Source: Haliotis rubra (taxonomy: Eukaryota). Taken from it: DNA of 64,000 nucleotides. This document shows positions 13,147-62,794 of this stretch, piece by piece. How positions within the stretch are numbered: the first letter of the stretch is position 1; each line of letters opens with the position of its first letter. The notes below the pieces were generated by a model. It was not told where the DNA came from. It was given only the letters and a program-made list of their open reading frames with translations, and ran no database searches. The position numbers and the translations under genes were made by a program. Where the stretch lies: assembly GCF_003918875.1 (NCBI RefSeq), contig NW_025765303.1, positions 868,001 through 932,000 of the forward strand. Direction: 5' to 3'.

Positions 13147-13217
13147 ATGAGATTTACAACTTCTTTATTATTTACAACACTATGTTTCTGGGCTACTTCT
13201 TTCCCCTTCATCAGCTT
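13147..13217 (-). mobile_element. Degenerate Penelope-like end with decayed hammerhead (CUGAUGA core)
   Basis: Minus strand CTGATGA-A-GGG...CCC-A-GAAA-CATA followed by AATAAAGAAGTTGTAAATC, the same terminal motif as the other copies. Confidence 0.45.
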
Positions 13218-15404
13218 AAATCAACACCACACGTTGTTATGTTACCATCCGACTTCTAAATGCCCATCACGCATCTGATACATATAACGCGTCACATGTG
13301 TATATATTCAATAAGTATACACGTGAGTTAGCATAGGTAACATAGTTTGGAACAAACACCTCCCCTAGTTACACTCTTGCTTGGTCGACATGCTGCACAT
13401 TTGGGAGGTTATGGTGAGTTTACGTGGGTGCTTCAAAATTTAATCATCTCTTGGCAAATGGTCAGATTGGTTCCCTTGTACAACATATAAGCAAGAAGCA
13501 TGAAGGGTTGTTACACTCCCCACTATAATCATCATCATCAAATGAATTTAATTAAAACTTCTCTGAATACGCATCGGCGGCTAACATTTACTAAATATAC
13601 AACATAAAGACTGACATGTATTTTGATTAAGGGTACTGGAGTTTCCGACCTGGAGAGATATTATTTGTAGATCAGATCATAATGTTGGTTGAAATATAAT
13701 GTTAAGATTATACTTTTTTTGTTTGAGATAATCTTTCTGTGCAAGGGGTGTGTTATGATGCGTTGAGAACAGTTGTTTCTAAAATTTCATTTTCAAGTTT
13801 TTAAATCGCAGTGTTCTATGAAACAGACTCTTATTCTGAACATCATATCACAGTGAACACTCGCCGCTAAGTGAGTAGCAAATGTCTTACTACAGTTATC
13901 ATGCACATGTACCATACATGCTGTATTAAATCAGACATATAATAATACATGGAAAGGTGTATCTTTTATATCATCAGGAAGACTTCGCTCTTTTCTCAGT
14001 GTTGGTTGAAAAATGCAATTATCATACACATATAACCAATTATCAGTGATTAAATCTAATTTATAATGGTTCATTAAATAGAGTATGATTCCAAATTTAC
14101 CACAAAACGTATATGATTATCATAAAACCTATTAAAATATAGATTTATTGCTAAAATTTAAACATGGCTATATGAAACTAGCTATGGCTTTCTTAAACAG
14201 TAATCATTTTAATTTTCACAAGTTATATACAGAATATCTCAGCTCAAAAACTACACCACGTAGTTGAACATATATGTTATTAGAGGTGTTCAGGGGTTTG
14301 AATTCCATTTCAACAGTTTGAATTTTAAATTTAGTATTCTCCAGAAACTTCTATGTCGACAGGTGGAGTGCGCCGGCCACTTTGTACCAAACAAGCCCCA
14401 CCCACCATTCCATTCAAGTTAAGCATGTGGCTATTCATAATATAGCCTCTGGCATGTATTCAAATTATGGCAATTTTACAATAAAGGCCCACAGCGGGAG
14501 ACTGTCTATGGTTAAATATAACCATGAAACATATTGCAGAGCTTGCTGCTTTTAGTGGTACTCATTGTGGGTTTTTCAATAAACGGACGTTATAGCGAGG
14601 AGGCTATGTGACCTGACATGGTTCCCCGTTATAAAGAATATTTCTTCGGTTAAACAGGTTTAAACGACTATTTCAATGGTAACAATTTATATGGTTATGA
14701 AGCGATTTAAACGAGTTAGACATGAACGGGCTTAGTCGACACATGGCAGACATGAGACGGAATATGCCGAGGATTAAGGTTGTGTTATTTTAACCGAAAA
14801 GCACTCATCTGCTCAACACGATCGAGCCTTATAGCCTTAATGTGATCTAAAATAATAACTTGTACTGTCGTTTCAATTTCTCTAATCTACGTTTATGATA
14901 CAGAAATAACGGCTAAAGGAGTTAAGTGAAAGTGAAAGGCTTAGTTAATTCAGGCAGAAATTCGCTAGTTAAGTTCTGTCTAAATAAATCACGTGTACAG
15001 CTAAAGCACATATGTGTTTTAGTTCTACATGTGTTAACAATCTGAAAGGTATATGTAAAATGCAAGCAAATTAAATATAACCTCTGTGTCGAACAAAACA
15101 GCAGTATACTTCGTAAAAGAAGTTACATTTTACCATGCTTTGCAATAGTGGCAATAATGGCAAATGGCAATTAAAATTCAATAAAATGCATGATTTTCTC
15201 GGAAAATATTTTTCCTGAAATTAATACGAATGTTTCTACATTTAATAATTTACTTTACAGCAAATGGGAAAAGACGACACTTAATGTATAGGACTGTCAC
15301 AAAGCATCTACAATATCTGGGGTATCGACACGTTAGAGGCACTGTGACGTACATGGGATACAACCCCTAAAATATACATACGAAACATTTTAACATGTGA
15401 GTAC

Positions 15405-15760
15405 TATCAGGTAAGTAGTGTGTCTGACTATAGTGGCCCAGCCGATGTCTACCTGAGCGAGATATGTCACCACCATCAAACGGAACATATTCTACCTGTA
15501 ATTACAGGTAACTGCTGATGCTCAACTAGCTCTAAGAATATCAGCCTGCCTGTCAGTGTAAAGTCAGCACCTACCTAATCACAGTCCAGAGAGGGTACAC
15601 CGCGTAACATGCATGTCCGCCACCCAACTTTCACCTGTATGCGAAAGCTCTCTCACCTGGGATGCGCGTCCATATGACAGAAGGAATTTGATTGGTCACA
15701 ATCTTTCTCTGGCCGCGAGCGTTTTGGCGCGGATATTATTCTATATAGAACCGAGCTGCG
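15405..15760. promoter_or_regulatory. Cluster of CAGGT(A/G) E-boxes with CCAAT and CpG-rich segment (candidate enhancer or promoter)
   Basis: Six CAGGTA/CAGGTG matches on either strand in about 250 bp, followed by GATTGG and CGCG-rich sequence. Confidence 0.35.
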
Positions 15761-17210
15761 CGCGCTGACTATGACTGTTATCAAATACAAAAGTGTTGAA
15801 ATTATACATGTTTTCTGTTTTGAAAGATTGCTCGATGTAAGATGGGGTGCGGTGTGCAGCCAATCAGGAGGTTTACAAAAGCATCAGCGTCTCGTACAGT
15901 CTTTGTTTATGAAATGGTCTGATGGTTGCTAAGTAGCCAGCCGCATCATGTATTTGTTAAAAACGACGTTTGTTCTTAAGGAAAAACGTTGAACATATTC
16001 AGCGGATGCTTTAGTACTTGATGAAACCAGTCTGACGGGTCTTTAAAGGCGGTGTTTTAACTCTTATACATTAAACTCGTATTGAAACCACCCAATAGTA
16101 ATATGCTCGTATGGGTCCTGTCATGTCACGGTACAAGTAATGCATTTATTCGACTCTTTTCTGATGTAGATACGAGAGCTCAGGGTGGATTTTCTTATAA
16201 ATTTGAAATGAAAGTTTTCAGAAAGAACTAAAATAAATAGGTACATAATCAAGACCCATGGGTTAGAAAACTTTTTATCTGAAATTCGCATATTTGCCAT
16301 CAACAGCATGTTTCCAAACGTGATTGTGGCTCTTTATTGTCAATTGTCCCTCCCAGAAAATACCTTTTCGGATACGTACGTCCAAAAATATTTACAGTAA
16401 ATTTAAGCTTACCAAGTCTTAAAAACGTAATATTTGTGACTTTATATTATGGCTAAGTTTGACTACAATCGCCAGCGAATGAAGGGATGATATCAACCCA
16501 GCCAGGGTACTCTAAGTCCCTATTATGGTGATCTACCTTTAGTTGCTGGCTATCTACAGTTTTATATTGTATTCCTCTGTTTACAAAGCCACTTTTAGAG
16601 ACAGATGCTAGTTTCAAATTCTGGTTCTGCGATATTCTAAGTCGTTATTACTGTCCTTTGTCGACAGGTTTTTACAATTTAAACATTTTTATCATGCATT
16701 CAGAACTTGTTGAATGTCAAGATATGGCTGAAATACTGCCGATGCGACTTTAACTTTTAACTCACTCACTCACTCACTCCCAGAAAACACAGCATTGAAT
16801 ATAACACAAATAACTCTCTTTGAACACATCGAATAAGTAAATTACGCCTGTGTTTTTATATAAAAAATATATATATAATTCAAAAGCAGCACCTTTATAA
16901 TGAAACGCTGAATCGTTGAAACTAAATCGTTATCACGGGGCAGATAACGAAAGGCATATTCTAAAGATGGAAATTTACCTGTCATATCTAAGTTACCTGG
17001 TTACCTGAAGCCACATCGTTCCGTATCTCGTGATGGGGGAATCTCAGAACTCGAGGGATACATCCGTTACAACAATTAGTCGAAGTTGTCATATAGCGCA
17101 AACATACGTCGTCTAAATTTATAGCTGGGCAATATCATGAATATATTCTCTGAATATATTTCATTATGTCTCAAGGTATATACAACATTATATGGAGTGA
17201 ATTAATCAAT

Positions 17211-17321
17211 CAGGGGACCGATTTTCAAAGCTCTGTTAGTGCTAAGATAGTCGTAAGTTAATGTTAATGTATGGCACTTAGCTATCTTAACGCTAAGAGA
17301 GCTTCGAAAATCTAGGCCCAG
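17211..17321. mobile_element. Palindromic MITE
   Basis: Imperfect fold-back CAGGGGACCGATTTTCAAAGCTCT...AGAGCTTCGAAAATCTAGGCCCAG. Core GTCGTAAGTTAATGTTAATGTATGG is shared with 50278-50600 and 58815-59064. Confidence 0.6.
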
Positions 17322-18173: not shown

Positions 18174-18337
18174 NNNNNNNNNNNNNNNNNNNNNNNNNNN
18201 NNNNNNNNNNNNNNNNNNNNNNNNNNNNNNNNNNNNNNNNNNNNNNNNNNNNNNNNNNNNNNNNNNNNNNNNNNNNNNNNNNNNNNNNNNNNNNNNNNNN
18301 NNNNNNNNNNNNNNNNNNNNNNNNNNNNNNNNNNNNN
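18174..18337. other. Assembly gap (164 N)
   Basis: Run of N bases. Confidence 1.
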
Positions 18338-18391
18338 TCGCAGCAGTAGTAGTACATAAGTCTCCCCCCACCCCACCCCCGATCCGCCAAT

Positions 18392-19359: not shown

Positions 19360-19597
19360 ACCCGTGAAGATCCGGGTTAGAATTGACCTTCAGCAACCCA
19401 TGCTTGTCGTTAGAGGCGACTAAGGGCATCGGGTGGTCAGGGTCGCTGACGTTGTTAAGACAAGTCATTGTATCCCAATTGCGTACAGTGAGGTTCAAAC
19501 TGTTGACCACTGGATTGACTGGGTCCAGACTCGTTTATTTTCAGATCGCCGCGATATAGCTGGAATATTGTTGAGTGCGGCGTAAAACAACAAACAC
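19360..19597 (+). mobile_element. Short retroelement family B (structured non-tRNA head)
   Basis: ACCCGTGAAGATCCGGGTTAGAATTG...GTCGTTAGAGGCGACTAA...ATAGCTGGAATATTGTTGAGTGCGGCGTAAAAC; matches other copies in the window. Confidence 0.85.
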
Positions 19598-20593
19598 AAT
19601 ACAAGGAGTACATATATCTTTTCTATATCGAATTTACTATTAGGGGTAAAACCTGTGATACACCGAAGACATTACTTTGAGATAACATTGTTTATTATAT
19701 CTGGAATATTTTAACACTATATTTATCTGAAATTATGAAATCGAGATGAGAGGAAAGTCCGTGTCAGAACAATATTGACCGTCACACGTTCTCGGAGTAG
19801 CATTCGCTAAAACGCAACCGGAAAATATGATTTCAAGAGTATTACGCGAAATACAATGTAGACCAATCTCCTTCATGCGGTAGATGCGCCCATATATTAC
19901 ATCAGTATGCAACTAGGTTATACAGGTGTAATGTTGGTGTCGTTTTAAGGTCAGAGGACAAAAAACTGAGGACGAGACTGAAACGTTCACTGCCCACAGT
20001 TAATGGAACATCATTACTAATGGAACGACCTACTGGAGACAGAACGACTTTCATTCATAATTATGTATCAACTGAAAACAACTCCCGGTTAGGATGTGCT
20101 TCGATTAAAGTAACAAATAAAAATTGAGAACAGTTGTCTTTTTCTCTCCATACTGCTGACATTCGATAAAATTGGTCAAACACAGAAGGGTGGTACACGT
20201 GTCCTGACTGGTTCTCTTTGCGATGTGCGCATCATCCTAGATCAGAACCCAGTTTACTTTGGCTGTACGGACATCGTGGGGTACCTCGCGTATTGAAAAT
20301 AAGTACCACAAGCGTATTAAAAACATTTATTTATGAAAGTTTTCAGAGGAGGAAAATATCAATAATGCCATTTGCATTCATCATTATTGTGAAATGCAAA
20401 TATCATCGTCATCGTCCTTATTATTCAACGCAACTCCGTCATTACAAGAATAAGAATTGGAACAGCATTACTGCCTAAGAAACCCTCACAGATGGCCAAA
20501 AAATCGTTTTGGCTATGCCTGATGCATGCTCATCTTCAGAATTGATTGACAAGCGTATATGTACATTAACACTCTGTGCACAGGTTCAGCATT

Positions 20594-20667
20594 CACCTGA
20601 TGAAGGAGCAAGCATTAGCTCTGAAACGTCGTATAAAGAATTTAATAGAAGTTGTTATCCATAAAAC
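20594..20667 (+). ncRNA. Minimal type I hammerhead ribozyme (canonical core) in a Penelope-like element end
   Basis: AC-CTGATGA-A-GGAGC-AAGCATTA-GCTCT-GAAA-CGTC-GT: intact core, helix II, loop-less palindromic ACGT helix III, GUC cleavage triplet. Followed by AATAGAAGTTGTTATCCATAA. Confidence 0.75.
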
Positions 20668-21189
20668 GTGTCCTGTATTCAAACGTATATGTGTTCAGTG
20701 GCTCTTGTCAGAATTTTCGACTGTAATTGATCCGATTTCTAATTGATTCACTCCTAATTTAGGGAACGTACGATATCTTTCATTATTGATTTGCTTGGTA
20801 GAAGGTCAGCGAAGCCTGACCGAGAGTGCACTTGCTGACTGGGCTGGAACACAGGGCAAGCGTTGTTGGAACACGTGAACATCTACACGACATGTCTCAC
20901 TGTCTTGTCTGAGAAGTGGGACGCCCTAGTCCGTGCCACAACCTGTGACATACCCTGACATATGAAACATGTGAAACATTACGTGAAATGCATGTTTATT
21001 TGCAACCGACAGTCGGAAGCGATTTAGAATTGTTGCTATCAGGTGAATGTATTAAATATCGCGTTCAAGATTATTGCACATTTGTAGTGAAATGCATGCA
21101 CGTGTATGTGCATGGCTGCTTGTAATGGTCCGAATCACGATACTTTATTTGTGGCAGCCCCTGCTGTGCAAAACTACATCAACGTCAAC

Positions 21190-21515: not shown

Positions 21516-22768
21516 ACTTACCAAAAAAAGAATTAAAAAACAAGTGCCAGGAAGGTACTTTCTTGTTTCGGTCACGTGGACATACTAACTAGCTATTGCT
21601 CCTATGCCTAAAATGCTTTATGTAAAACGCTACATTTTTTAAACAATTGTTATAATTAATGACTGCCGATTAAGTGCATTTCAGTTTGGCACACCTGTTG
21701 CGCTCTTATTGACCTGTGTATTACTATCCATTTGTAAAACTGTGACTTGATCTATCTGAATATTTTGAAATATTTTTTTATTATTTATTTCGATACATTA
21801 TCCCATTTCCAGTGCCACGGAACAGTAAATTCCAAAATAAAATACGTGATCATTGATCAAATATAAAACCACAGCATTTGAGATCAGAACCAGATCAGAT
21901 TATATCAGAGTACTATTTTCCCATGAAATTGATAACTGTGCTGCGAACCAAATAACAAGACGAACAAGTCAAAGCCAGGCTGGTATCGAAGGTGTAAGCA
22001 CGTTCGAGGGAAATCTACCAACCTGTCAACTGACAACATTCAATCAAAGTCAAAACTTCGGGTGGCTCTCGGCGAACACGTACCAGTAACATTGCATGGC
22101 AGAGTCGACTCTTTACTTTATGAAATTGATTAGTAAAACGTGACTCTGACATTGAGTGACAGGCTTCATGACATGTAGCAACGTAACTGCACACTGAGAC
22201 CGTCAATGAAATACATGTTTCTTTCACTGGTTGCATGTCGCGGGATCTGTCGACATCTTTGATGGACCGGGATATTACAATGTTCACACGCTCCTGAAGG
22301 GCTGGCCTCCATGTTTTTTTACAAATCGATATGAATTTTTGATTAGGTAAAGATTCGTATTTGAAACGAATACAAGTGATTCTTTTTTAACGAATAATAT
22401 TCAGCTCTGATAACAGCCCACGGGTACTGTAAGTACATAACAATATTTACTTTTCATATATTATTTCAATTTTGTTATCGTTTGTTTCTACCCGTGCTAT
22501 TTTTGCGCCTAACAAGCTATTAAGTACGTTTCCATTTTATTTTGCCTTTTTTCATGTCAATGAAATACGAAGAGTTCATGTAAACAGAAATCTGAAAAGA
22601 ACCCAGAGCTGGAAAGACATGCAAACGTCCATCACAGTGCCAATTTATGTCTGCGCAACCACCAGTAATAATGTTTGTGTTGAGGGTATTTCATATGATT
22701 TAATCAATAAACGCCTAGTGATCACTTGTAAATTATACTATTGACAATAATATTGACTTAATTGCAAT

Positions 22769-22997
22769 CGTAAGAGGCGACTAACAGGATTGGGTGGTCA
22801 GGCTCGCTGACTTGGTTGACACATGTCATTTTTCTCAATTGCGTAGATCGATGCTCATGCTTTTGGTCACTGGATTGTCTGGTCCAGACTCGATTATTTA
22901 CAGACCGCTGCCATATAGCAGGAATATTGCTGAGTGCTGCGAGCATGGCAAGCATGGGTTGCTGAAGACCAATTCTAAATCGGATCTTCACGGGTCT
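22769..22997. mobile_element. Family B copy with body (+, 22769-22939) and head (-, 22951-22997) in opposite orientation
   Basis: TCGTAAGAGGCGAC...GCTGAGTGC on +, followed by the reverse complement of the head, AGCATGGGTTGCTGAAGACCAATTCTAAATCGGATCTTCACGGGT. Confidence 0.8.
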
Positions 22998-25420: not shown

Positions 25421-25776
25421 TGATGGATATATTGATACAAAACACCTAAATATTTAAAGCAAAACCTCTGATGGAACCCCGACAGGCCCTTAAATATCGC
25501 CTTCCGACGATGCTAGAAACGACAACATCTATATCTACACCCATACTAAGCTGCACCTCTGACACACTTCTACTGATATTTATAAACCAAGAGGACTTCT
25601 CTGTGGACAGTTCCGTCCGGATCTAGAGGGGTTTCTATGTTGTTGTTGTTGAGTTAGATGCTTTGGAGGTCGCCTTCGCCGGTTGGCATGTCGGCAGACC
25701 TATCCCTCCTTGAGATGCGTGGGGAGGTTTCTATGTACTCATGCACTGTATATATAGCCTCGGTTGTCCCCAAACA

Positions 25777-25955
25777 GGGAGATGGGGTAGCCTAGTGGTT
25801 AAAGCGTTCGCTCGTCACGCCGAAGATCCGGGTTCGATTCCCCACAAGGGTACAATGTGTGAAGCCCATTTCTGGTGTCTCCTCCGTGATATTGCTGGAA
25901 TATTGCTGGAATATTGCTAAAAGCGGTGTAAAACTTAAAACGCATGATCACTCAC
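25777..25955 (+). mobile_element. tRNA-headed SINE family A
   Basis: A box TAGCCTAGTGG, B box GGTTCGATTCC, tail GCTGGAATATTGCTAAAAGCGG(T)GTAAAAC; TSD TGT(C/T)CCCAAACA. Confidence 0.9.
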
Positions 25956-27120: not shown

Positions 27121-27613
27121 CTGCACTAATGGCGTCATGGTCTGTGTCTCACAAAGAGGTTGTGGGGTTTTCAGCTTGAGCAAAGCTGCAGCCCTCTGTT
27201 CACTTGAAGCTGGCTGATAGGGGGTTATAATTAAACCTGTAGTGGTTATGTAAGTCGGGGTCATAATGTCAACACTTCCAGACCCCGAGGAGACAGTTAT
27301 TTCTCCGATAAGTCTCTCAATGGTTTTATTGTACAATGCTGAAGAGCTGCATGTTAGGGTGCCGCGATGGGAATATGGTAGAATTAAGTCATTAACTTTG
27401 GACGAATGCTACTAAACAATGTTACAATAAACTGGATAATGTTTGGGTTGGCTGATAACCGATAACTAACTACCCATAAAATAATATATATATGTTTTGC
27501 ATTTTAATCTGTAACAACTACACAGCAACACTGTGAAACGCGTACAATAATTCAAAATGAATTTACTGTTGAACTGTTTGAGAGGCATTTTAGAAGTTGT
27601 AAGCAATAGGAAC

Positions 27614-27732
27614 GACAAGTCTTGATGGATGATCAACTTCTTTATAGTGGTGTGCTTGAAAACAGTATAAGTATCTATACCGAAACGTCGCCATTGTACA
27701 ATACAGAAGTTGATCATCCATAAACACTTGTC
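27614..27732 (+). mobile_element. Fold-back Penelope-like remnant with U3-A8 hammerhead
   Basis: Inverted ends ATGGATGATCAACTTCT/AGAAGTTGATCATCCAT enclose GC-TTGAAAA-C-AGTATA-AGTATC-TATACC-GAAA-CGTC-GC (27654-27691). Confidence 0.65.
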
Positions 27733-29431
27733 ACTCCTATGGCATTACTGGTGCTCTGTTTAAAGGTGCACATAATGCCAAGGGTGCTTTTGGGTAGCCT
27801 AATGGTTAAAGCGTCCGCTCATCACACTCGGATTCATTTGCGTTAAGGCGTTTTCTCTTCACGAATTCCACAAAAGATTACATATTAAGTATGAGTAAGC
27901 ATTTCTGAACCAGTTTAACTGCAAACGGAAAGAGATGTCATTATGTATTGTCGTCTCATACTCGTTTGCATTTTATCACATCTTACAACAATATACACAA
28001 TGTAGGGCTGTTTGGACTGTGTGTAAAATGTCTTGTCATCCCATTGTGTTATATGCGAGAAAAATACATTCAGCATTAACACCGCCCTCCAAAAATGTCG
28101 AATGGTTGGTCCTAAATCCAGTAAAAGATTGGATGTTGTTTACTTCGATGAGAATAGTTTAATACTCTGTGCTCAGTCAAGTATGTCGACGTACAATAGG
28201 CGTGGTTAACTGCATACACCTTAAAGATCTCATAATTATATTGGTGGTTAAATGACAAGCATAGATTATTATGTTAGACTGTGTAGAAAATGGACATGTA
28301 CAGTGCAGTTATTTTATGAACACACGCCCACCACTCGTGAACACCTTTACAACAGATAAAGATTCTTAACTTTGGACGTATTCCTTAGCCACCTCCGTGT
28401 AAGGGAATACTGCTCCTTAAAGGATTATTTTCTCGAGAACTTAATGGCGACACTTTATTGTGAAAGCCCTTGTCTAAGCTGGCATTTAATCCCGTTATGC
28501 TTTAAGATGCTATTGACAAGGTCCATCTGACAACGATGGTCGGTCGGATGAGTATGACCACACAAAAACGATTACGTGTTCTAAAATCTCCTCGTGTGAC
28601 CCACATTGGCCATAACAATGGATGAACGTCCGTTCCTGAGGCGAACACTATTTTAACAGTAACTTTGCTCTAGGCGAGTGTTGTCGCCTGGCATGACATA
28701 ATGTATCTTATATAATTTGTAGTTGTATAACTCTATCAGGGTCAATATTGGTACTAATAGCATAGTATCCTTTTGGTGCTAAACGATTTTTTGTGCAGGG
28801 AAAAGTACATGTTTTAAAGCGATATCCTTGAGCAAAAAGGTGGTTTTGTCTTTTAACAAGAGGGATTTAGAATATTTATCCTGATCAAGATCTAATATCT
28901 TATGAAAACTATATCATGTATAACTATACAAGTGAATAAAGTCACTATTATACGCGTTTGCTAGATTATGACATAATTTATGTGTAAAACATATCATATA
29001 GTTTAACCCTAGGGCGTACAACTTGAATCATTCGACAGGGTATGAATCAATACCATATAAGGAGATTGATTATGTGGTGTGAATAAAACAAGTGGGTTAA
29101 ATTCGAGATAATACAAATTTACAGATCGTGTTGTTTTAAACGAACGAGAGAGTTTAATCACTGATTACATAAGTGTATAGATCATTGTGTAAATCCCCAA
29201 AACGATTATTCTTATATTGTGAAACATAACATTCCTCAGACTTCCATATCTTTTTGCACCAGCATCTACAAAATGTACGTCATTCGCCATTCTACAAACC
29301 GGAAATAACGCTGTCTGTGTTTCGGTTGTAATTTTAACTCCCGATCCAACTATCTGCAACAGCCCAAAGATGTTCGGTAACTTCTTTGAGTGTCATTTCT
29401 AGTGGCATTTTACAAGCTGGGAAGAACAATA

Positions 29432-30095
29432 TAGACAAACTTTATGGATAACAACTTCTTTATTTCATCAGTGCCACGTTTCGATACAGATTCGTGTACC
29501 GTTGTCAAGCAGGAATGTGAGTGAATTTAGTTTTACGCCACACTCAACAATATTCCAGCTATTTGGCGGCGGTCTGTAAATAATCGAGTCTGGACCAGAC
29601 AATCCAGTAATCAACAGCATGAGCATCGATCTGCGCAACTGGGAACCGATGACATGTGTCAACCAAAACAGCGAGTCTGACCACCCGATCCCGTTAGTCG
29701 CCTCCTACGACCTAGCATGGGTTACTGAAGTTCAATTCTAGCTCGGACCTTCACGGGTCAGCAGGAATGTAACATGAAGTGGAGGCAAAGTATATATATT
29801 GAGTTTGACAAAGAAAACATGACAATTCACAAAGTATATGTACTTTGCTTCTACTTCATGTTGCATTCCTGCTTGACAACGGTACAAGAATCTGTATGGA
29901 AATGTTTGTCAATCTTGTTCTTTGAGTGGCATTTTGTGAAGTTGGGAAGTACTGACAAGTTTTTGGATAACAACTTCTTTTATTTTGTGAGTGCGATGTT
30001 TCGAAACAGACTGTCTGTTCAACAACGGTACAAGAATCTGTATCGAAAAGTCGCACTCTCAAAATAAAAGAAGTTGTTATCCATAAACATGTCTG
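29432..30095. mobile_element. Inverted (fold-back) Penelope-like remnants with U3-A8 hammerheads, interrupted by a family B insertion
   Basis: Minus-strand TGC-TTGACAA-C-GGTACA-CGAATC-TGTATC-GAAA-CGTG-GCA at 29472-29511; plus-strand copies at about 29870-29905 and 30020-30056; terminal AATAAAAGAAGTTGTTATCCATAA motifs point outward. Confidence 0.7.
29519..29758 (-). mobile_element. Short retroelement family B, full length
   Basis: Full head-to-tail match; TSD AGCAGGAATGT on both sides. Confidence 0.9.
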
Positions 30096-30623
30096 TATTA
30101 AAGATACTGGGTTACTAGACTTTCTTCAGGTCGTCATACGATAAAACGCTGGACGTAAAATACCTTAAGCCTGCTTACATGAAAGCTTAGGAACTGCATG
30201 AACCTGAGGCCCTGGTAATAACATTAACACATAATAACCATCTAGCCCACAGGTCACGTGACGCTGACCTTGAGGCTGTTAGTGTCGTGTTTGAAGCTGT
30301 CTGTGAGGTGGTAACTGTTTGATAAACAATGGCTACAATTCTGAGCCATGTAATTAAATCCCATTTATTAATTCCTCTAAATACGTAAGATCGGTACGTA
30401 TTCATTTGAGCCACTCTTAACGACATCCTTTTCTGACAACTGAGGCTTCAATTTAGGTTTCACCATCAAAGGTTAGGTCATTCTCGAAATTTTATAGTAT
30501 TTATTTAGAGTAATCTATTCAATATGGCGCTGGGTTGGTAAACACGATGTCGTCTCATGCTATGACCGTTGCATGAAGTTTCACACGTACTATAACTTCT
30601 AATTCTTAGTCTCTGAATATAAA

Positions 30624-30864
30624 ACCCGTGAAGATCCGGGGTAGAATAGGTCTTCAGCAACCCATTCCATAAAAGGCGACTACTTGTCGTAAGAGGCGAC
30701 TAACGGGACGCTGACTTGGTTGACACATGTCATCGGTTCCCAATTGCGCAGATCGATGCTCATGCTGTTGATCAGTGGATTGTCTCTCGATTATTTACAG
30801 ACCGCCGCCATATAGCTGGAATATTGCTGAGTGCGGCGTAAAACTAAACTCACTCACTCACTCA
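30624..30864 (+). mobile_element. Short retroelement family B
   Basis: Head ACCCGTGAAGATCC, (ACTC)n tail, TSD CTCTGAATATAAAA; small internal duplication and deletions. Confidence 0.9.
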
Positions 30865-31167: not shown

Positions 31168-31409
31168 TGAGTGACTGAGTCAGTTTAGTTTTACGCCGCA
31201 CTCAGCAATATTACAGCTATCTGTAAATAAACGTGTCTGGACCAAACAATCTAGTGATCAACACCATGAGCATCGATCTACGGAATTGGGAACCGATGAC
31301 ATGTGTCAACCAAGTCAGCGAGCCTGACCACCCGATCCCGCTAGTCGCCTCTTTAATACGACCTAGCATGGGTTACTGAAGATCAATTCTAACCCGGATC
31401 TTCGCGGGT
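31168..31409 (-). mobile_element. Short retroelement family B, full length
   Basis: TSD TCTTATCATATTGCAG; head variant ACCCGCGAAG...TAGCGGG. Confidence 0.9.
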
Positions 31410-31871
31410 CTTATCATATTGCAGACTGATTATTCTCTTGCGAAAGAACAATAGGAACTCACTAAAACTAAAACATATTAATATACACACACTTTCTGCG
31501 AACACCTGGTGTCATCAGTATTTACTAAGCGATTCATAAATACGTACCTATGACAGTGGGAATTGAACTATCGATTCTGCTTTTAGCAGATATGTCATAT
31601 GAGTTTGGGAAGAGTTTTATCGCTTTCAGTTGACCACAAACAGACTGAACTAACCACTAAGTATTTAATACGAAGATTTCAAACTAGCACAAGTTTTGAC
31701 AGCTGAAGGACATATCAATAGGTAATTATAACATTAACTGCCTGGTGCAAGGAAATATACAACCATGTATGACTGTGGATAATATATAACTGTAAATAAA
31801 ATATATGACTGAAGATATAAGGGCAGTATATCTATGTCTTGGATCTTACGTTTGTGAAGTCAGATCTATCA

Positions 31872-32099: not shown

Positions 32100-32254
32100 G
32101 GGGGCGGTTGGGTATCCTAGTGGTTAAAGCCTCCGCTCGTCACGCCGAAGGCCCGGGTTCGATTCCCCACATGTGTGAAGCCCATTTCTGGTGTTCCCCG
32201 CTGTGATATTGCTGGAATATTACTGAAAGCGGCGTAAAACAAAACTCACTCACT
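32100..32254 (+). mobile_element. SINE family A
   Basis: A/B boxes, conserved body and tail. Confidence 0.9.
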
Positions 32255-37004: not shown

Positions 37005-37390
37005 TGTTACTAGTATGCCTCTACTACTAATGACTAGTATGCCTCTACTACTAATTACTAGTATGCCTCTACTACTAGTTACTAGTATGCCTCTACTACT
37101 AATTACTAGTATGCCTCTACTACTAATTACTAGTATGCCTCTACTACTAATGACTAGTATGCCTCTACTACTAATGACTAGTATGCCTCTACTACTAATG
37201 ACTAGTATGCCTCTACTACTAATGACTAGTATGCCTCTACTACTAATGACTAGTATGCCTCTACTACTAATGACCAGTATGCCTCTACTACTAATTACTA
37301 GTATGCCTCTACTACTAGTTACTAGTATGCCTCTACTACTAGTTACTAGTATGCCTCTACTACTAGTTACTACTATGCCTTGCTACTAGT
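37005..37390. repeat. 24-bp minisatellite, about 15 copies
   Basis: Unit ACTAGTATGCCTCTACTACTA(ATG/ATT/GTT). Confidence 0.95.
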
Positions 37391-40300: not shown

Positions 40301-41245
40301 ACTACTATATTGTTACCACCGCTACCACTGTTACTACTATGTTGTTGCTACCGCTACCACTGTTACTACTATATTGTTGCCACCGCTACCACTGTTACTA
40401 CTATGTTGTTGCTACCGCTACCACTGTTACTACTATATTGTTACCACCGCTACCACTGTTACTACTATATTGTTACCACCGCTACCACTGTTACTACTAT
40501 ATTGTTACTACCGCTACCACTGTTACTACTATATTGTTGCTACCGCTACCACTGTTACTACTATATTGTTGTTGCTACCACTGTTACTACTTTCATTGTT
40601 ACTACTATATTGTTACTACTATACCCGCTACCACTGTTACTACTATATTGTTACCACCGCTACCACTGTTACTACTATATTGTTACCACCGCTACCACTG
40701 TTACTACTATATTGTTACTACCGCTACCACTGTTACTACTATATTGTTACCACCGCTACCACTGTTACTACTATATTGTTACCGCTACCACTGTTACTAC
40801 TATGTTGTTACCACCGCTACCACTGTTACTACTATATTGTTACCACCGCTACCACTGTTACTACTATATTGTTACTATACCGTTACCACCGCTACCACTG
40901 TTACTACTATATTGTTGCTACCGCTACCACTGTTACTACTATATTGTTGCTACCGCTACCACTGTTACTACTATATTGTTGCCACCGCTACCACTGTTAC
41001 TACTATATTGTTACCACCGCTACCACTGTTACTACTATATTGTTACCACCGCTACCACTGTTACTACTATATTGTTACCACCGCTACCACTGTTACTACT
41101 ATATTGTTACCACCGCTACCACTGTTACTACCACTGTTACTACTATATTGTTACCACCGCTACCACTGTTACTACTATATTGTTGCTACCGCTACCACTG
41201 TTACTACTATATTGTTGCTACCGCTGCCACTGTTACTACCAGTAC
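37391..41245. repeat. 32-bp satellite array (~3.8 kb)
   Basis: Unit ACCGCTACCACTGTTACTACTATATTGTT(G/A)C(T/C); homogeneous at both ends, degenerate in the middle. Confidence 0.97.
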
Positions 41246-42271
41246 TGCTTCACCAGCTGCTAATGTTACAGCTAGTCTGTGATGGTTGCTATCAAGAAGA
41301 CAGGCTCAGCGGGAGGAGTAGGGATATTTACCTTGATACTGAAAGCCCGTGAACATTTAAACCGGAAAGTTATAATCGTTCTGCAATTATTACATTTAAA
41401 TAGCGAATAACTCTTTTAAATTACAATTTTATGATGGTAGTTATGCATTTCGCCTTTACATTGGACACATTGACATGTTTCTTTTTACAGCAGCGCAATG
41501 TATTCAACTACACACATGTGCTTGCTCAATATAGTATAACCCTGGCCGCCATCTTGCACCCAGTGCCCCCGTCTGTTGTATGGGTGTACATGTTGGTACT
41601 GTGTTGGGACATGTCTTCTGCATGTCGGCAGGGACAGGGCGTGGGAGAAAGACGGTGTTTGTTGACACTGTCAACGTTCATGCTCCTCGGAACCTGACGA
41701 CGTTAGCGCGTGTATACACGTTTAAACATTGATGAGCTTGGCAACGTCACGATGGCAGGCCAGATTGCTGTGAGAGAAGTTTTGAAGATGTGTCCTAGCG
41801 TGTGCGTGCGCGTGTGAGTGTGCGTGTGCGTGTGATGTCTGAGTGAGTGAGTGAGTGAGTGAGAGAGAACGCGTTCAACGCTGCTTTGAACAGTATTCCT
41901 GATATAAGACCATGTCAGCTGAATATGAGAGGAAAGCATGACATGACGCATGTCATGATCGAAGGCAAACCGGGTATAGGTTCCTGGCGTCCTAAAGGGA
42001 CGCAATTCTGCGTACCAAATGCGGGGTCTTAGACATCTGGCCTGAGTGAATAATTCAAGTTGTTTTGGTGTCATGTAAAATATCAGAATTTATGTTATTA
42101 TCTTTGTTTCGACTAAAATAGATCTTTAAAAATGGAGATAACCGCTTCAATGTTCTATCATGTGCTTTTAGACAACTACATGTACATCATTAAACTCTGA
42201 AGCTATACAAATGCAAACCAGCCCACTGAACGGAGTTTCTAAAATTCACACATAACTGTCGCTATCGGTGA

Positions 42272-42433
42272 GTGAGTGAGTTAGGTTTTACACCGCTTTT
42301 AGCAATATTCCAGCAATATCACGGAGGGGGACACCAGAAATGGGCTTCACACATTGTACCCACGTGGGGAATCGAACCCGGGTCTTCTGCGTGACGAGCG
42401 AACGCTTTAACCACGAGGCTATCCCACCGCCCC
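42272..42433 (-). mobile_element. SINE family A
   Basis: Near-consensus copy; TSD CTATCGGTGA. Confidence 0.92.
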
Positions 42434-43154
42434 CTATCGGTGAATGAACGTTATAACCGTTATTATAAACATGTAGTCAAAAAAACTTTGTACAAGCAGT
42501 GTTTTATTATTATGTTACTATATTGTAGTTATGGAGTGGTTACTTTAAGTTCCGCAAATAATAATGAAGAATACTCAAAAAGCAGTTTTATAGCATTTAC
42601 TATTTAATCTCAAACCATTGTTATTATCGTTAAGGTCACTTCAATGACCAGTTGAAATGATCTCTTTCACTTTTTATGTGGATAACGATAAAATCACGGT
42701 AACATAATACCACAGAACACAGATAGCCAAAGCGGAATACCGTTATGGTTTAGGTACCCACGTGTATAATTTCGTTTCAGTTTACTTTGCGTTCGTAAAT
42801 CGACTTAATAAAATACCACTGATTTTGTAAATGAAATATTTTTTTAATAAACGAGCATAAAAATGGTATGAATCAATCTCTGCAGTGAAGTTTCAGTCCA
42901 ATGGAATACAATCTTCATGATCTTGGCCAAAATTACCAAACGCATAATTTATAGAATTAAAATAATTCTGTTGATCTTATGGATAGGAACATACCTCCCT
43001 ACACAACCGGGCAAAAGAACATATACACACGCACTCTGGATTTGACTGATTTCTAACACTGAAACATCACAAACTGAAAAAAAAGTCAATGAAACATTCC
43101 AAGCTTAAAGGTTAAAACACAACTATGATACTTTGGTTCCTTCCTTGTTTTCAG

Positions 43155-43318
43155 GGGACGGTAGGGTAGCCCACTGGTTAAAGCGTTCGCTCGTCACGCT
43201 GAAGATCCGGGTTCGATTCCCAACATGGGTACGATGTGTGAGGCCCATTTCTGGTGTCCCCCGCCGTGATAAATATTGTTGTAATATTGCTAAAAGCGGC
43301 GTAAAACTAAACTCACTC
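43155..43318 (+). mobile_element. SINE family A
   Basis: A/B boxes and tail; TSD approximately CTTGTTTTCAG. Confidence 0.9.
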
Positions 43319-51000: not shown

Positions 51001-51162
51001 AGTGAGTGAGTATGGTTTTATGCCGTTTTCAGCGATATTCCAGCAATATCACGGCGGGGACACCAGAAATGGGCTTCACAAATTGTACCCATGTGGTGAA
51101 TCGAACCCTGGTCTTAGGCGTGACGAGCGAACGCTTTAACCACTAGGCTACACCACCGCCCC
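51001..51162 (-). mobile_element. SINE family A
   Basis: Near-consensus reverse copy. Confidence 0.9.
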
Positions 51163-52637: not shown

Positions 52638-52820
52638 TGAAGATCCGGGTTAGAATTGGTCTTCAGCAACCCATGCTTGTCGTAAGAGGCCACAAACGGG
52701 ATCGGTCGTCAGGTCGCTGATTTGGTAGATTCATGAGGTATATGCACCCATTGCGGTGGTATATATTCCTGTCAATCACTTGAATGTCTGGTCCATACTG
52801 TAGTCTGTCATGCAGACCCT
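52638..52820 (+). mobile_element. Family B, degenerate 3' part
   Basis: TGAAGATCCGGGTTAGAATTGGTCTTCAGCAACCCATGCTTGTCGTAAGAGG. Confidence 0.8.
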
Positions 52821-53954: not shown

Positions 53955-54149
53955 GACGTGGGGTAGCCTAGTGGTTAAAGCGTTTGCTCGTCAAGCTGAA
54001 GACCCGGGTTCAATTCCCCACACGGGTACAATGTGTGAAGCCAACTTCTGGTGTCCTCCGCCATGATATTGCTGGAATATTGCTAAAAGTGGCGCAAAAC
54101 TAAACTCACTCCTTGTTTTCAGCCACTGTCTCTCATTCACTCACTCACT
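53955..54149 (+). mobile_element. SINE family A with extra 3' segment and second tail
   Basis: Standard body, then CCTTGTTTTCAGCCACTGTC, then a new TCATTCACTCACTCAC tail. Confidence 0.85.
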
Positions 54150-54680
54150 TCTTCTAAGTGTGATCGCTTTCGTTGATAACGTTTGACAGTACTATAACAT
54201 ATTTGTTCATACGATCACGCTGAACTTGGGTACTTTCGGTTCGTTGATAACTAAACAGTTTGAAAACCAAATCCTCAGTATAACATAAAACGCTTAATTC
54301 ATTAACATCATATTCAACCATGATGAGAAAGATGAATAGTGAGCAAGTATAGATAAAACAGAAGTCTGAATACGACTTTCTACAGTCAGTAGCTGAGTGA
54401 GTGAATGGGATTTAATGCCGCATTTGAATAGGATACACTTAAAACCACGGTTTTACAAATGAATACAGCTTAAGCTGACCGATCTGCTACTCATGCGAAC
54501 CCGTGATGACGCTTGGATACAGCAAGCGGATACTGTAACGTCAAAGGGAGGCAATTCTAACATCCTCTGATCAATCCGCGCCCTCAAAAGGTCTTAATAG
54601 CTGTACAGATCAACCAAAAGTTACTTCTTAAGAAAGTGTCGCTGGTGGCCCAATAGCTTAATGTGTCTCAGTTGACAGTG

Positions 54681-55147
54681 ACCCGTGAAGATCCGGGTTA
54701 GAATTGGTCTTCAGTAACCAATACTTATCGTAAGAGGCGACTAACGGGATCTGCTGGCAAGACTCGCTGACTTGATTAACACATATCATCGTTGAATGAG
54801 GACAATTTTTTCAAAAGCAAGTGGAACAATAGATGAGGGTTGTATAAATATCTCATGTATATAATCACCCAAATTACTTCTCATGTACCACTTGCTTGAC
54901 AACGACATTAGAATCTATGTCGAAATGTCGCATATACAGAATAAAGAAGTTGTATATCCATAAAAATTCTTCATCTCCTCAACTTCTTGAATGGCAATCA
55001 AAGACAACATGTCATTGTATCCCAACTGCGTAAATCGATGCTTGTGAAGTCATCACTGGATTGACTGGCCCAGACTCCATTAGTTACAGACCACCGCCAT
55101 ATAGATGGAATATTGCATTGTGCGGCGTTATAAACAACAAACAAACA
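54681..55147 (+). mobile_element. Family B copy split by a Penelope-like insertion
   Basis: Head at 54681-54792; body resumes near 55007 with a duplicated ACAT(A/G)TCAT(C/T)GT. Confidence 0.8.
54893..54965 (+). ncRNA. Minimal hammerhead, U3-A8 variant, in a Penelope-like end
   Basis: TGC-TTGACAA-C-GACAT-TAGAATCT-ATGTC-GAAA-TGTC-GCA, then AATAAAGAAGTTGTATATCCATAA. Confidence 0.65.
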
Positions 55148-58814: not shown

Positions 58815-59064
58815 CTGTCGTAAGTCTATGTTACAGAAAGGGCGGTGGGGTAGCTTAATGGTTAAGGCGTTCGCTCGTAGCGCCGATGACCCGGGCTCGA
58901 TTCCACACACGGGTACAACGTGTGCAGCCCATTTCTGGTGTTCCCCGCCGTGATATTGCTGGAACATTGCTTTAAAGCAGCGTAAAACAAAACTCACACA
59001 CTGTGTTACATTATAGGAGGTACGACAGTCATGGCTTACGATAGCTTTGTGAAACGGGGCCCAG
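58815..59064. mobile_element. Palindromic MITE interrupted by a SINE family A copy (58840-59001, +)
   Basis: GTCGTAAGTCTATGTTACA [SINE, TSD TGTTACA] TTATAGGAGGTACGAC...GCTTTGTGAAACGGGGCCCAG. Confidence 0.8.
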
Positions 59065-60089: not shown

Positions 60090-60251
60090 GTGAGTGATTG
60101 TGTTTTACGCCGCTTTTAGCAATATTTCAGCAATATCGCAGCGATGGACACCACAAATGGGCTTCACACATTGTACCCACGGGGTGATTCGAACCCGGGT
60201 CTTCGGCGTGACGAGCGAACGTTTTAACAACTAGGCTACCCCATCGCCCCC
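60090..60251 (-). mobile_element. SINE family A
   Basis: Reverse copy with A/B boxes. Confidence 0.88.
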
Positions 60252-61101: not shown

Positions 61102-61187
61102 TTTTTTTAAAGGAAATCCCAGAGTTGGTAATATAAGTCATTCTTCGATGAGAGTCACTTTGGAAATACGGAAATTCGGGGCATGTT

Positions 61188-61427: not shown

Positions 61428-61581
61428 GAGGCTTATTTATGATTACAAATAAGTATGTATATTCAGCACTAACTAGGCCTTGTTGAAAGATATATTTTGA
61501 GTCATACACCGATGTGTAGCATTGTGTTTCATGTCTTTGAGTGGCATTCAGGAAGCTGGTATGATGAACAGGGACGATTTT

Positions 61582-61655
61582 ATTATGGATAGACAACTTC
61601 TGTATTACAATAGATGCAACATTTCGGTGTGGATGATAACACCGTTATCAAGCAT
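61582..61655 (-). ncRNA. Minimal hammerhead, U3-A8 variant, in a Penelope-like end
   Basis: Minus strand ATGC-TTGATAA-C-GGTGT-TATCATCC-ACACC-GAAA-TGTT-GCAT, then AATACAGAAGTTGTCTATCCATAA. The matching inverted end AAGTTGTCTATCCATAA is near 62043. Confidence 0.65.
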
Positions 61656-61797
61656 TTGATACACAACATTATGCACAAGGAGAACATGCACATGAAGGGT
61701 ATTTGAGTTCATACAATTGAAGAGGTTGATGTACAGTGTGGTGGCATTACTGATAGTTGTTGTGATAATAAATAATGGTATAAAGCCAGATAGACAA

Positions 61798-62034
61798 AAT
61801 AATAATAATAGTACGCTTATATGGCGCTCATATCCAGGCACATTGCCTGCTCACGGCGCTACGTACATTGCTATCCCCGGTCATAGGACACAATCGTACT
61901 TCCGATACTTGTTCAACTCCCTGGGGATCAGGCGCAATGAACTAAACACTCACGTTGCCAGCACATCCACACGGGTCCCATTTTACAGCTGGGTAAACTG
62001 TGACAAGGTGGATCTAAGTATCTTGTCCAAAGGG
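61798..62034 (-). mobile_element. CORE-SINE-like remnant with L2-type tail
   Basis: Minus strand TTGGACAAGATACTTA...CAGTTTACCCAGCTGTAAAATGGG (CORE-like), ending GCGCCATATAAG...TATTATTATT. Confidence 0.65.
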
Positions 62035-62794
62035 TAGTCTATAAGTTGTCTATCCATAAAAAACCGTTCATGTTCATTAAAAATAATGAGAATATTTATA
62101 ACACGCCTTTCCCATGCTGGATATCCTGCTCAAGGCCCACAGTTTTCATTGTTTCATTGACGTGGTCATATTTATTTAATGAAGGAGAAACATGATATAA
62201 CTGAGTTTTCATAAATTTCTTTCTTTCTTAAATCTCGAAAAGATGTTATGAATTTATCAATGCATGTGACCCTTCACGAATTGTGTACTCCCTGACGTTT
62301 AACCACTGCGTTCGGTTGCCATGGCGATTGGAATAAGTCACCAACTGCCTGTATATGGTCATCATTGGTTATGGGTTTGTCTAGGGCTTTATACGGACGG
62401 CTGCTGTTGTTTGGATCCCACGGTGAGACAGTAGAACAAGGCAGTTTCTCATCATTGTAATTGCACCACACGGATCGATGAATTATTTATCGATGAGGAA
62501 ACATCCCCCATCGCCCCGTGTGCTACCTGTATCACGTGACAGGCGCCTGACACGCGTCACGTGACCCATACAAAGGTGAATGCCGCCATCTTTATTGATG
62601 TGAGGTGTAAATCTGTTTGTTCACTGGAGTGTTGAAGGTTAAAGGAGAGGGGATAAACGGATGGTACAAACAAGTGTTGCGGTGGGAACAACATTACGTT
62701 GGTTTTCCAGTTTATTCCATATGTTCATAAATCACGAACTGTTTTAAGATAATACGCCAGTATGGTCAGAAAGAGACTCGTTCGTACATATCAT

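What the first reader, a model, noticed from the sequence alone, without database searches (positions are those of the whole stretch)
13147..62060. Family of Penelope-like ends carrying minimal hammerheads with a natural C3-G8 to U3-A8 core swap and covarying helix II
Seen: canonical cores CUGAUGA at 20597 (+) and 13214 (-); variant cores UUGA(C/A/U)AA at 27656 (+), 29508 (-), 29873 (+), 54896 (+) and 61651 (-). Almost all are followed by the same AATAAAGAAGTTG(N)3ATCCATAA end. Helix II changes sequence but keeps pairing (GGAGC/GCUCU, GGUACA/UGUAUC, GUAUA/UAUAC, GACAU/AUGUC, GGUGU/ACACC). One extra nucleotide always follows A9, and helix III is loop-less (GAAA-C/U-GUH). Established: positions 3 and 8 form a Watson-Crick pair in the active hammerhead, and Penelope-like elements carry minimal type I hammerheads with palindromic helix III thought to cleave as dimers. 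Inference: a successful lineage of U3-A8 ribozymes exists here that standard CUGANGA searches would miss.
Basis: partly seen in the sequence, partly recalled or inferred. Interest (0 to 1): 0.8.

Follow-up and report, generated by a model that had tools for sequence, protein, structure and literature searches.

The report
Penelope-type mini hammerhead relics, U3-A8 core
The flagged motifs are real: short, mostly decayed insertions left by Penelope-like retrotransposons, each carrying a minimal hammerhead ribozyme, most with a U3-A8 pair in place of C3-G8. That variant was published in 2014, so this is a new example of a known thing.

Summary
A core-to-GAAAYGT pattern hits 6 times against 0.04 expected. 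Positions 3 and 8 are complementary in all 9 copies (7 U-A, 2 C-G). Helix II is paired in 84% of cells, with two-sided changes in 4 of its 6 pairs.

The copies belong to six insertion events with Penelope-like scars:
- target-site duplications (13 and 15 bp well supported; others about 9 and 17 bp);
- variable 5' truncation;
- head-to-head inverted copies;
- two alternative 3' ends, 45-55 nt or 74-91 nt after the cut site.

ATCCATAA is therefore an internal 3' module, not the end.

Most copies look dead. The CpG at 15.2/16.2 survives in only 3 of 9, one of which has G17, and two others have broken cores. The window holds no RT/GIY-YIG ORF and no head-to-tail pair.

Loop-less helix III, the extra base after A9, the U3-A8 covariation and opposite-strand pairs are all described by Cervera & De la Peña 2014 (PMC4209133). 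This scan reached the same reading on other DNA of this genome (s1-329446).

Cleavage activity and the autonomous parent could not be tested. The assembly gap (18174-18337) touches no copy.

The parts
13136..13278 (-). Insertion 1: leader, decayed C3-G8 min-HHR (13181-13214) and short tail (13136-13180). Flanked by the candidate 9-bp duplication TTATATGTA (13279-13287 and 13127-13135).
   Evidence: (70.5 bits). Helix II has only 3 bp and helix III reads GAAAC-AUA (the CpG has decayed to CpA).
20563..20679 (+). Insertion 2: a simple 117-nt insert made of a 34-nt leader, a C3-G8 min-HHR (20597-20630, GAAAC-GUC intact) and a 49-nt short tail. The 13-bp target-site duplication lies at 20550-20562 and 20680-20692 (12 of 13 identical).
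   Evidence: (84.1 bits).
27574..27744 (+). Insertion 3: a fold-back. It consists of the reverse complement of a long tail (27574 to about 27647), about 8 nt of leader, a U3-A8 min-HHR (27656-27689, UUGAAAA, GAAAC-GUC) and a short tail (27690-27744). Candidate duplication TTACTGNTG at 27563-27571 and 27745-27753.
   Evidence: arm alignment score 60 against a null maximum of 23. folds it as a hairpin with the hammerhead at the tip, z -6.2.
29384..30099 (.). Insertion 4: a composite of four copies in alternating orientation.
- A(-): HHR 29475-29508, G17, long tail down to 29384.
- B(+): HHR 29873-29906, no tail.
- C(-): deleted HHR 29995-30022, long tail down to 29920.
- D(+): broken core 30018-30052, short tail to 30099.

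A later SINE insertion lies at 29518-29760. The candidate 17-bp duplication is at 29366-29382 and 30100-30116 (13 of 17 identical).
   Evidence: C/D arms score 72 against a null maximum of 25.
54793..55003 (+). Insertion 5: a 211-nt insert inside a SINE copy, made of a 103-nt 5' part that folds on itself, a U3-A8 min-HHR (54896-54929, UUGACAA, GAAAU-GUC) and a 74-nt long tail. The roughly 15-bp target-site duplication lies at 54779-54792 and 55004-55018.
   Evidence: alignment with three intact SINE copies fixes both borders; 91.6 bits.
61535..61663 (-). Insertion 6: a U3-A8 min-HHR (61618-61651, UUGAUAA, GAAAU-GUU) with a long tail (61535-61617). The 5' border was not determined.
   Evidence: (83.8 bits).
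61800..62077 (+). An unrelated SINE-like repeat that ends in the same 3' module (AAGTTGTCTATCCATAAAA...CATT) but has no hammerhead.
   Evidence: (15.4 bits, tail only).

Best explanation
These are old, short 3'-terminal pieces of Penelope-like retroelements, or of short passengers copied by the same reverse transcriptase.

Shown here:
- Each piece holds a leader, a 34-nt minimal type I hammerhead and a conserved 3' module.
- The hammerhead has core boxes, a 5-6 bp helix II, one unpaired base after A9, and helix III reduced to A15.1-N15.2 / N16.2-U16.1 with no loop.
- The 3' module reads ...AAAGAAGUUG-N2-3-AUCCAUAA...
- Two core types occur at homologous positions, C3-G8 and U3-A8.
- The U3-A8 type has split into at least four diverged sublineages. 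Their helix II sequences differ but still pair, so the source elements stayed under selection for the fold.
- The insertions carry target-site duplications, variable 5' truncation, head-to-head inverted copies, and either a short or a 25-40 nt longer 3' end.

Inferred from published work:
- In the transcribed source elements, two hammerheads pair through the palindromic ACGU to build helix III, then cut after H17.
- U3-A8 replaces the C3-G8 tertiary Watson-Crick pair isosterically.
- The PLE reverse transcriptase starts at one of two internal sites in the 3' module, which gives the short and long ends.

The copies in this window are relics, not working ribozymes.
For: Real, not chance: 6 pattern hits against 0.04 expected. 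Nine copies score 29-92 bits on the family model, and nothing else in the 64 kb scores above 18.4 bits.

Hammerhead fold:
- Pair 3-8 is U-A in 7 copies and C-G in 2, with none discordant.
- Helix II has 83.7% of cells paired and 4 of 6 pairs changed on both sides. No shuffle out of 500 reaches the covariation score, and slid controls pair in 20-57% of cells.
- RNAalifold recovers helix II de novo.

PLE-type insertion:
- Target-site duplications of 13 bp (20597) and about 15 bp (54896, fixed by the SINE alignment).
- Inverted arms are significant for 27656 and for C/D.
- There are two classes of 3' end.
- All of this matches the published PLE hallmarks: 5' truncation, an adjacent inverted copy, and a 30-40 bp tail at one end (PMC8557442; PMC3846280; two reverse transcription start sites in PMC11167929).

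The motif matches the published min-HHR description point by point, U3-A8 included (PMC4209133).

Related sequence is abundant: summed depth in a DNA run of the same organism is about 10^3-10^4 times that of single-copy flanks. It also occurs in contigs of three probable RNA runs.
Against: - The window has no RT or GIY-YIG ORF, so the link to an autonomous PLE rests on insertion scars and on the literature.
- No cleavage evidence: only contigs were available, with no read ends.
- Published PLE min-HHRs cleave poorly even as dimers. For one PLE, cleavage was not needed for insertion in vitro and no RNA-seq reads ended at the cut site.
- Helix I is weak, with 2-4 contiguous bp.
- The 3/8 swap is a single event on the family tree, so independence of the two positions is barely tested with 9 copies.
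- Decay is heavy. The CpG at 15.2/16.2 is intact in 3 of 9 copies, G10.1-C11.1 in 4 of 8, one copy has G17 and two have broken cores.
Confidence: 0.82

Rival explanations
1. The conserved leader, stem-loop and tail act as a recognition and priming module for the element's reverse transcriptase. The hammerhead-like core is kept for protein binding or is vestigial, and no self-cleavage occurs in this family.
For: The same 3' module ends a SINE-like repeat that has no hammerhead (61800-62077). Published PLE min-HHRs show very low activity. In the PAc element, unprocessed RNA was the dominant substrate and no reads ended at the cut site. Naiad PLEs thrive without hammerheads.
Against: Both core boxes sit at exact hammerhead spacing. 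The extra base after A9 and the A15.1-U16.1 pair are kept. Above all, the concerted change at positions 3 and 8 is what the hammerhead tertiary pair predicts, and a protein-binding site would not obviously need it.
Confidence: 0.2
2. U3-A8 is not a selected variant. It is decay of dead C3-G8 copies by C-to-T and G-to-A transitions.
For: Both changes are transitions. The window is CpG-poor and TpG-rich (CpG o/e 0.80, TpG 1.29). The copies are old, with arms about 71% identical in 27656.
Against: Neither C3 (followed by U4) nor G8 (preceded by U7 in the C3-G8 copies) lies in a CpG. All U3 copies have A8 and none is half-changed. The U-A state is shared by four sublineages only 62-76% identical over the 34 nt, and their helix II changed by compensatory pairs. 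So the swap predates their spread, and the elements kept multiplying afterwards.
Confidence: 0.05
3. The repeats are miniature inverted-repeat DNA transposons (MITEs) or non-LTR retrozyme arrays rather than Penelope-type retro-insertions.
For: Three loci are fold-backs flanked by short duplications. Animal retrozymes also carry type I hammerheads and are thought to derive from PLE pLTRs.
Against: The duplications vary from 9 to 17 bp. The 20597 insert has no inverted arm at all. 5' ends vary while 3' ends fall into two fixed classes, which indicates reverse transcription from the 3' end. There is no head-to-tail tandem array: the model finds only isolated or alternating-orientation copies.
Confidence: 0.05

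Closest known systems
Minimal hammerheads (min-HHR) of metazoan Penelope-like elements, including the U3-A8 variant of the Schistosoma mansoni Cercyon family (Cervera & De la Peña 2014, PMC4209133)
   Same: - Type I topology, with helix III reduced to the conserved A15.1-U16.1 and a palindromic 15.2/16.2 with no loop.
- One unpaired base between A9 and 10.1.
- G10.1-C11.1 preferred.
- High sequence variety with compensatory changes.
- U3-A8 in place of C3-G8.
- Mostly single dispersed motifs, some in pairs on opposite strands 100-700 bp apart.
   Different: - The host is a mollusc according to the scan's notes. The only held paper that names U3-A8 reports it in a flatworm.
- Helix II here is 5-6 bp rather than 7-8 bp.
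- The 3' module AAAGAAGUUG..AUCCAUAA is family-specific.
- No link to an RT/EN ORF is seen in this window.
Canonical EN+ Penelope-like elements (Penelope/Poseidon, Neptune, Nematis, Hydra clades) and their insertion structures (PMC8557442, PMC3846280, PMC11167929)
   Same: Heavy 5' truncation, an adjacent inverted 5'-truncated copy, composite tandem/inverted insertions, short target-site duplications, an optional extension of about 30 bp at one end only, and a hammerhead near the 3' end.
   Different: No coding part is present. The longest piece has only about 100 nt upstream of the hammerhead. The duplications seen here (9-17 bp) are somewhat longer than the 8-10 bp reported for rotifer PLEs.
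Animal non-LTR retrozymes (Cervera & De la Peña 2020, PMC7229834; Li et al. 2026 preprint, 10.64898/2026.07.22.740005)
   Same: Non-coding repeats with type I hammerheads that need a second copy to form helix III. They are thought to derive from PLE pLTRs.
   Different: Retrozymes are head-to-tail tandem arrays that yield circular RNAs. Here the copies are isolated or in alternating orientation, and no array is present.
Rfam Hammerhead_1 (RF00163) and the other Rfam hammerhead models
   Same: The same catalytic core boxes and type I order of helices.
   Different: No copy reaches even E = 10 against any Rfam hammerhead model. This holds for both CUGAUGA copies too, so the U3-A8 swap cannot be the only cause. 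I take the missing helix III stem-loop to be the main one, but did not test that.

Membership tests
PLE-type minimal hammerhead (min-HHR) | Core boxes Y3-U4-G5-A6-N7-R8-A9 and G12-A13-A14 in type I order | tested here: met
   Intact in 7 of 9 copies at a constant 34-nt span. C has an internal deletion and D has lost G5.
PLE-type minimal hammerhead (min-HHR) | Positions 3 and 8 are Watson-Crick complementary (C-G, or U-A in the published variant) | tested here: met
   U-A in 7 copies, C-G in 2, none discordant. This amounts to only one inferred swap event.
PLE-type minimal hammerhead (min-HHR) | Helix II supported by covariation, closed by G10.1-C11.1 | tested here: met
   83.7% of cells are paired and 4 of 6 pairs changed on both sides. 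Slid controls pair in 20-57%. The closing pair 10.1-11.1 is G-C in 4 copies, G-U in 1 and unpaired in 3.
PLE-type minimal hammerhead (min-HHR) | One unpaired nucleotide between A9 and 10.1 | tested here: met
   C in the U3-A8 copies and A in the C3-G8 copies, 8 of 8 with that region present.
PLE-type minimal hammerhead (min-HHR) | Loop-less helix III: A15.1-U16.1 plus a palindromic 15.2/16.2 that allows a dimer; H17 is not G | tested here: inconclusive
   A15.1-U16.1 is present in 9 of 9 copies. The 15.2/16.2 pair is C-G in 3, U-G in 3 and unpaired in 3, a pattern of CpG decay. H17 is C, U or A in 8 copies and G in copy A.
PLE-type minimal hammerhead (min-HHR) | Self-cleavage after H17, as a dimer | not testable with these tools
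   Only assembled contigs of public runs were available, with no read ends. Thermodynamic folds do not decide it.
Penelope-like element (insertion) | ORF with an RT and a GIY-YIG endonuclease between pseudo-LTRs | tested here: not met
   No such ORF in the window. The ten ORFs scanned from the lists (six of 150 aa or more, four of 106-134 aa) give no RT or GIY-YIG Pfam hit. The 1300-aa ORF is a 32-bp minisatellite. The pieces are therefore truncated ends or passengers, and a parent elsewhere in the genome could not be searched for.
Penelope-like element (insertion) | Variable 5' truncation with an adjacent inverted 5'-truncated copy (head-to-head) | tested here: met
   Leaders range from 0 to about 100 nt. 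Inverted arms are significant for 27656 and C/D, and A/B meet head-to-head. This was not seen for 20597.
Penelope-like element (insertion) | [quoted passage not shown] | tested here: met
   Short ends at +45..55 (13214, 20597, D, right arm of 27656). Long ends at +74..91 (A, C, 54896, 61651, left arm of 27656). The two fold-back or composite insertions have one end of each kind.
Penelope-like element (insertion) | Short target-site duplication | tested here: met
   13 bp with 12 of 13 identical at 20597. About 15 bp at 54896, fixed by alignment to intact SINE copies. Weaker candidates at the other loci.
Non-LTR retrozyme | Head-to-tail tandem repeats, each with a type I hammerhead | tested here: not met
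   The covariance-model search with filters off finds only isolated copies or copies in alternating orientation.
Rfam hammerhead families | Match to a curated covariance model | tested here: not met
   No hammerhead hit at the gathering score or at E up to 10.

The most novel reading that the evidence does not exclude
The U3-A8 hammerhead may really cut in vivo and leave footprints in the genome.

Copy B (29873+) loses homology to the family exactly at position 16.1/17. Several other internal junctions of the composite insertions also sit at hammerhead borders. If a genome-wide tally showed an excess of insertion ends at H17, the template RNA must have been ribozyme-cleaved. That would be the first in vivo evidence that a natural U3-A8 minimal hammerhead works and feeds Penelope-type retrotransposition.
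Probability: 0.12. Interest if true: 0.55.

Novelty: new member of a known kind. Interest (0 to 1): 0.25.

Why it matters
In the literature I could search, U3-A8 as a natural hammerhead variant is named in one paper, for a flatworm. Finding it in diverged, structurally constrained sublineages of a second animal phylum shows one of two things: the isosteric swap is tolerated repeatedly, or it is old within Penelope-like elements. The practical point is that genome annotation with Rfam models misses this whole class. The result does not change what is known about how these ribozymes or elements work.

Tried and rejected
- **Rfam.** Searches at the gathering score and at E up to 10 gave no hammerhead hit.
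- **Public collections.** Scans for the hammerhead-plus-tail pattern gave three metagenome contigs, all chance matches without a hammerhead, and nothing in viral contigs.
- **Sequencing runs.** Only Logan contigs were available, so no information on RNA ends, strand or cleavage.
- **Parent element.** No RT/GIY-YIG ORF in the window. The big ORF at 37.4-41.3 kb is a minisatellite. I had no PLE protein from a tool to seed a protein search, so none was run.
- **'Every copy is a fold-back'.** Rejected. Only 27656 and C/D (and A/B by BLAST) have significant inverted arms. 20597, 54896, 61651 and 13214 do not pair with their own tails.
- **'The inverted arm of 27656 starts at the cleavage site'.** Rejected. 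The alignment starts at +9, and the inner GTGGTGT is a leader shared with 13214.
- **'The abundant tRNA-SINE of the window uses the same tail'.** Rejected. It ends in CACTCACT.
- **MITE and retrozyme readings.** Rejected; see the rival explanations.
- **Literature gaps.** Lünse, Weinberg & Breaker (PMC5785218) is not held, so I used the summary in PMC6765202. The biochemical rescue of C3/G8 mutants by the double change is from my own memory (Martick & Scott 2006; Przybilski & Hammann 2007). I could not check it in the library.

Full report
**Observation**

I read all seven sites and scanned the window with a loose hammerhead descriptor.
- CUGAUGA lies at 20597(+) and 13214(-).
- UUGANAA lies at 27656(+), 29508(-), 29873(+), 54896(+) and 61651(-).
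- In each copy the span from position 3 to position 17 is exactly 34 nt.

The fixed-spacing pattern YTGANRA-N19-GAAAYGT occurs 6 times against 0.04 expected from dinucleotide shuffles. Although the pattern lets positions 3 and 8 vary freely, all six hits are concordant. The tail motif occurs 4 times at up to 3 mismatches against 0.00 expected.

Two more copies lie in the 29.4-30.1 kb cluster: C (-, hammerhead with an internal deletion) and D (+, G5 lost). A covariance model built from the nine copies and run without filters finds no other full copy in the 64 kb.

Rfam finds no hammerhead here, even at E = 10. The assembly gap at 18174-18337 is 2.2 kb from the nearest copy and plays no part.

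**Structure of the motif**

On the nine-copy alignment A1 the 3-8 pair is U-A in seven rows and C-G in two, never discordant.

Helix II evidence:
- 83.7% of cells are paired.
- Four of the six pairs changed on both sides (10 cells).
- No shuffle out of 500 reaches the covariation score.
- Sliding the partner by 1-3 columns drops pairing to 20-57%.
- RNAalifold recovers the helix without being told.

One unpaired base follows A9 in every copy. A15.1-U16.1 is invariant. Helix I is weak, with 2-4 contiguous pairs next to the core. Copies that have a leader show a further ACUUCU/AGAAGU pairing with the conserved tail; I saw this by eye and did not test it.

Positions 15.2/16.2 form a CpG in the DNA. 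It is intact in three copies, TpG in three, CpA in two and ApG in one. The window as a whole is CpG-poor and TpG-rich.

**What the repeats are**

BLAST of each copy against the window shows that homology between copies is short, about 70-130 nt. The surrounding repeats are unrelated SINEs.

Two insertions have firm borders.
- The 54896 copy sits inside a SINE. Alignment with three intact SINE copies shows a 211-nt insert (54793-55003) flanked by a duplication of about 15 bp.
- The 20597 copy is a 117-nt insert between 13-bp repeats, 12 of 13 identical.

Weaker candidate duplications flank 13214 (9 bp), 27656 (9 bp) and the whole A-B-C-D cluster (17 bp, 13 identical).

The tails end in two classes.
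- Short, 45-55 nt after the cut site: 13214, 20597, D and the right arm of 27656.
- Long, 74-91 nt, ending ...AATGCCACTCAAAG: A, C, 54896, 61651 and the left arm of 27656.

So ATCCATAA is an internal module, not the end.

Orientation and truncation:
- Inverted arms are significant for 27656 (score 60 against a null maximum of 23) and for C/D (72 against 25), but not for the other loci.
- A and B meet head-to-head.
- The 27656 insert folds as one long hairpin with the hammerhead at its tip (z -6.2).
- 5' ends vary from 0 to about 100 nt of leader.

These traits are variable 5' truncation, an adjacent inverted copy, composite tandem/inverted inserts, short duplications and an optional extension at one end only. 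They are the published hallmarks of Penelope-like insertions (PMC8557442; PMC3846280). The two 3' ends fit the two internal reverse-transcription start sites shown for a lizard PLE (PMC11167929).

The window has no RT or GIY-YIG ORF. The 1300-codon ORF at 37.4-41.3 kb is a 32-bp minisatellite.

**Activity**

I could not test cleavage. The run search returned only assembled contigs. Laid at 80% likeness, they show two things:
- Family-like sequence is present in three probable RNA data sets.
- In a DNA data set it reaches summed depths about 10^3-10^4 times the single-copy flanks. This is not a copy number, and part of it may come from other repeats that share the tail.

There is no information on RNA ends.

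In this window most copies are dead: one has G17, two have broken cores, six have lost the CpG of helix III, and no two intact copies lie head-to-tail.

The case for function therefore rests on the source elements. The U3-A8 state is shared by about four sublineages that are only 62-76% identical over the 34 nt. Those sublineages changed helix II by compensatory pairs. So the elements went on multiplying under structural constraint after the swap. Neither C3 nor G8 lies in a CpG, so hypermutable decay does not explain the double change.

**Comparison with what is known**

Cervera and De la Peña (2014, PMC4209133) defined exactly this motif in the flanking repeats of metazoan PLEs:
- no helix III loop, and presumed action as dimers;
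- a conserved extra base between 9 and 10.1;
- G10.1-C11.1, and a palindromic 15.2/16.2;
- extreme variety with compensatory changes;
- mostly single dispersed motifs, with some pairs on opposite strands 100-700 bp apart.

They also reported the U3-A8 covariation in the Schistosoma mansoni Cercyon family, with about 1,300 hits for a U3-A8 descriptor. Activity in vitro was low even for dimers.

A full-text search finds that paper alone for 'U3-A8' with 'hammerhead', and none linking hammerheads, PLEs and Haliotis.

Earlier notes of this scan call the genome blacklip abalone. I did not verify the species myself. One followed-up note on other DNA of the genome reached the same reading (s1-329446). 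Other notes describe a SINE with a Penelope-type tail. The SINE-like repeat at 61800-62077, which ends in the same module without a hammerhead, is consistent with that.

**Verdict**

What stays open is whether U3-A8 minimal hammerheads cut in vivo. One small oddity bears on that. Copy B loses homology exactly at the cleavage position, and other internal junctions sit at hammerhead borders (note). With about six junctions examined this is roughly a one-in-ten coincidence, so I make no claim. A genome-wide tally would settle it.

Noticed in passing
window 6829-6897 (-): A mir-8/mir-200 family precursor, 60.2 bits against a gathering score of 47. This marks the window as bilaterian animal DNA.
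   Followed up: no
window 37007-41241 (+): A large minisatellite: a 24-bp unit x16 (37007-37388), then a 32-bp unit x about 115 (37437-41131). It has strong C-over-G and T-over-A strand skew. It produces stop-free frames of up to 1300 codons with no Pfam match.
   Followed up: partly
window 61800-62077 (+): A SINE-like repeat, single in this window, that ends in the same 3' module as the hammerhead elements (AAGTTGTCTATCCATAAAA...CATT, short-end form) but has no hammerhead. It may be a passenger of the same reverse transcriptase.
   Followed up: partly
window, e.g. 25776-25907, 32100-32253, 43164-43318, 53957-54111, 58839-59001 (+); 42268-42435, 51003-51161, 60091-60249, 62797-62957 (-): At least ten copies of a tRNA-derived SINE of about 155 nt that ends ...GCGGCGTAAAACTAAACTCACTCACT. 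One head scores as a tRNA in Rfam (30.7 bits), but ARAGORN calls no tRNA gene. Its tail differs from the Penelope-type module.
   Followed up: partly
window 29518-29760 (-), also 19360-19588, 22768-22936, 30624-30857, 31176-31410, 52638-52799, 63366-63556: A second SINE family of about 240 nt that shares its 3' part with the tRNA-SINE. One copy inserted into the A/B hammerhead pair, duplicating CAGGAATGT (29510-29518 and 29761-29769). Another copy (54679-54791 plus 55007-55128) is the host of the 54896 hammerhead insert. The two families were therefore active over overlapping periods.
   Followed up: partly
window 29873-29919 (+): Copy B stops matching the family exactly at hammerhead position 16.1/17. 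It is followed by 13 nt of filler that contains the reverse complement of its own core box, so the core can pair with the filler in an alternative hairpin.
   Followed up: partly
window 54793-54895 (+): The 103-nt part of the 54896 insert that lies 5' of the hammerhead has no relative in the window. It folds on itself: GCAAGTGG pairs with CCACTTGC just upstream of the core (whole-insert z -3.5). It looks like the reverse complement of the leader plus the start of a core box.
   Followed up: partly
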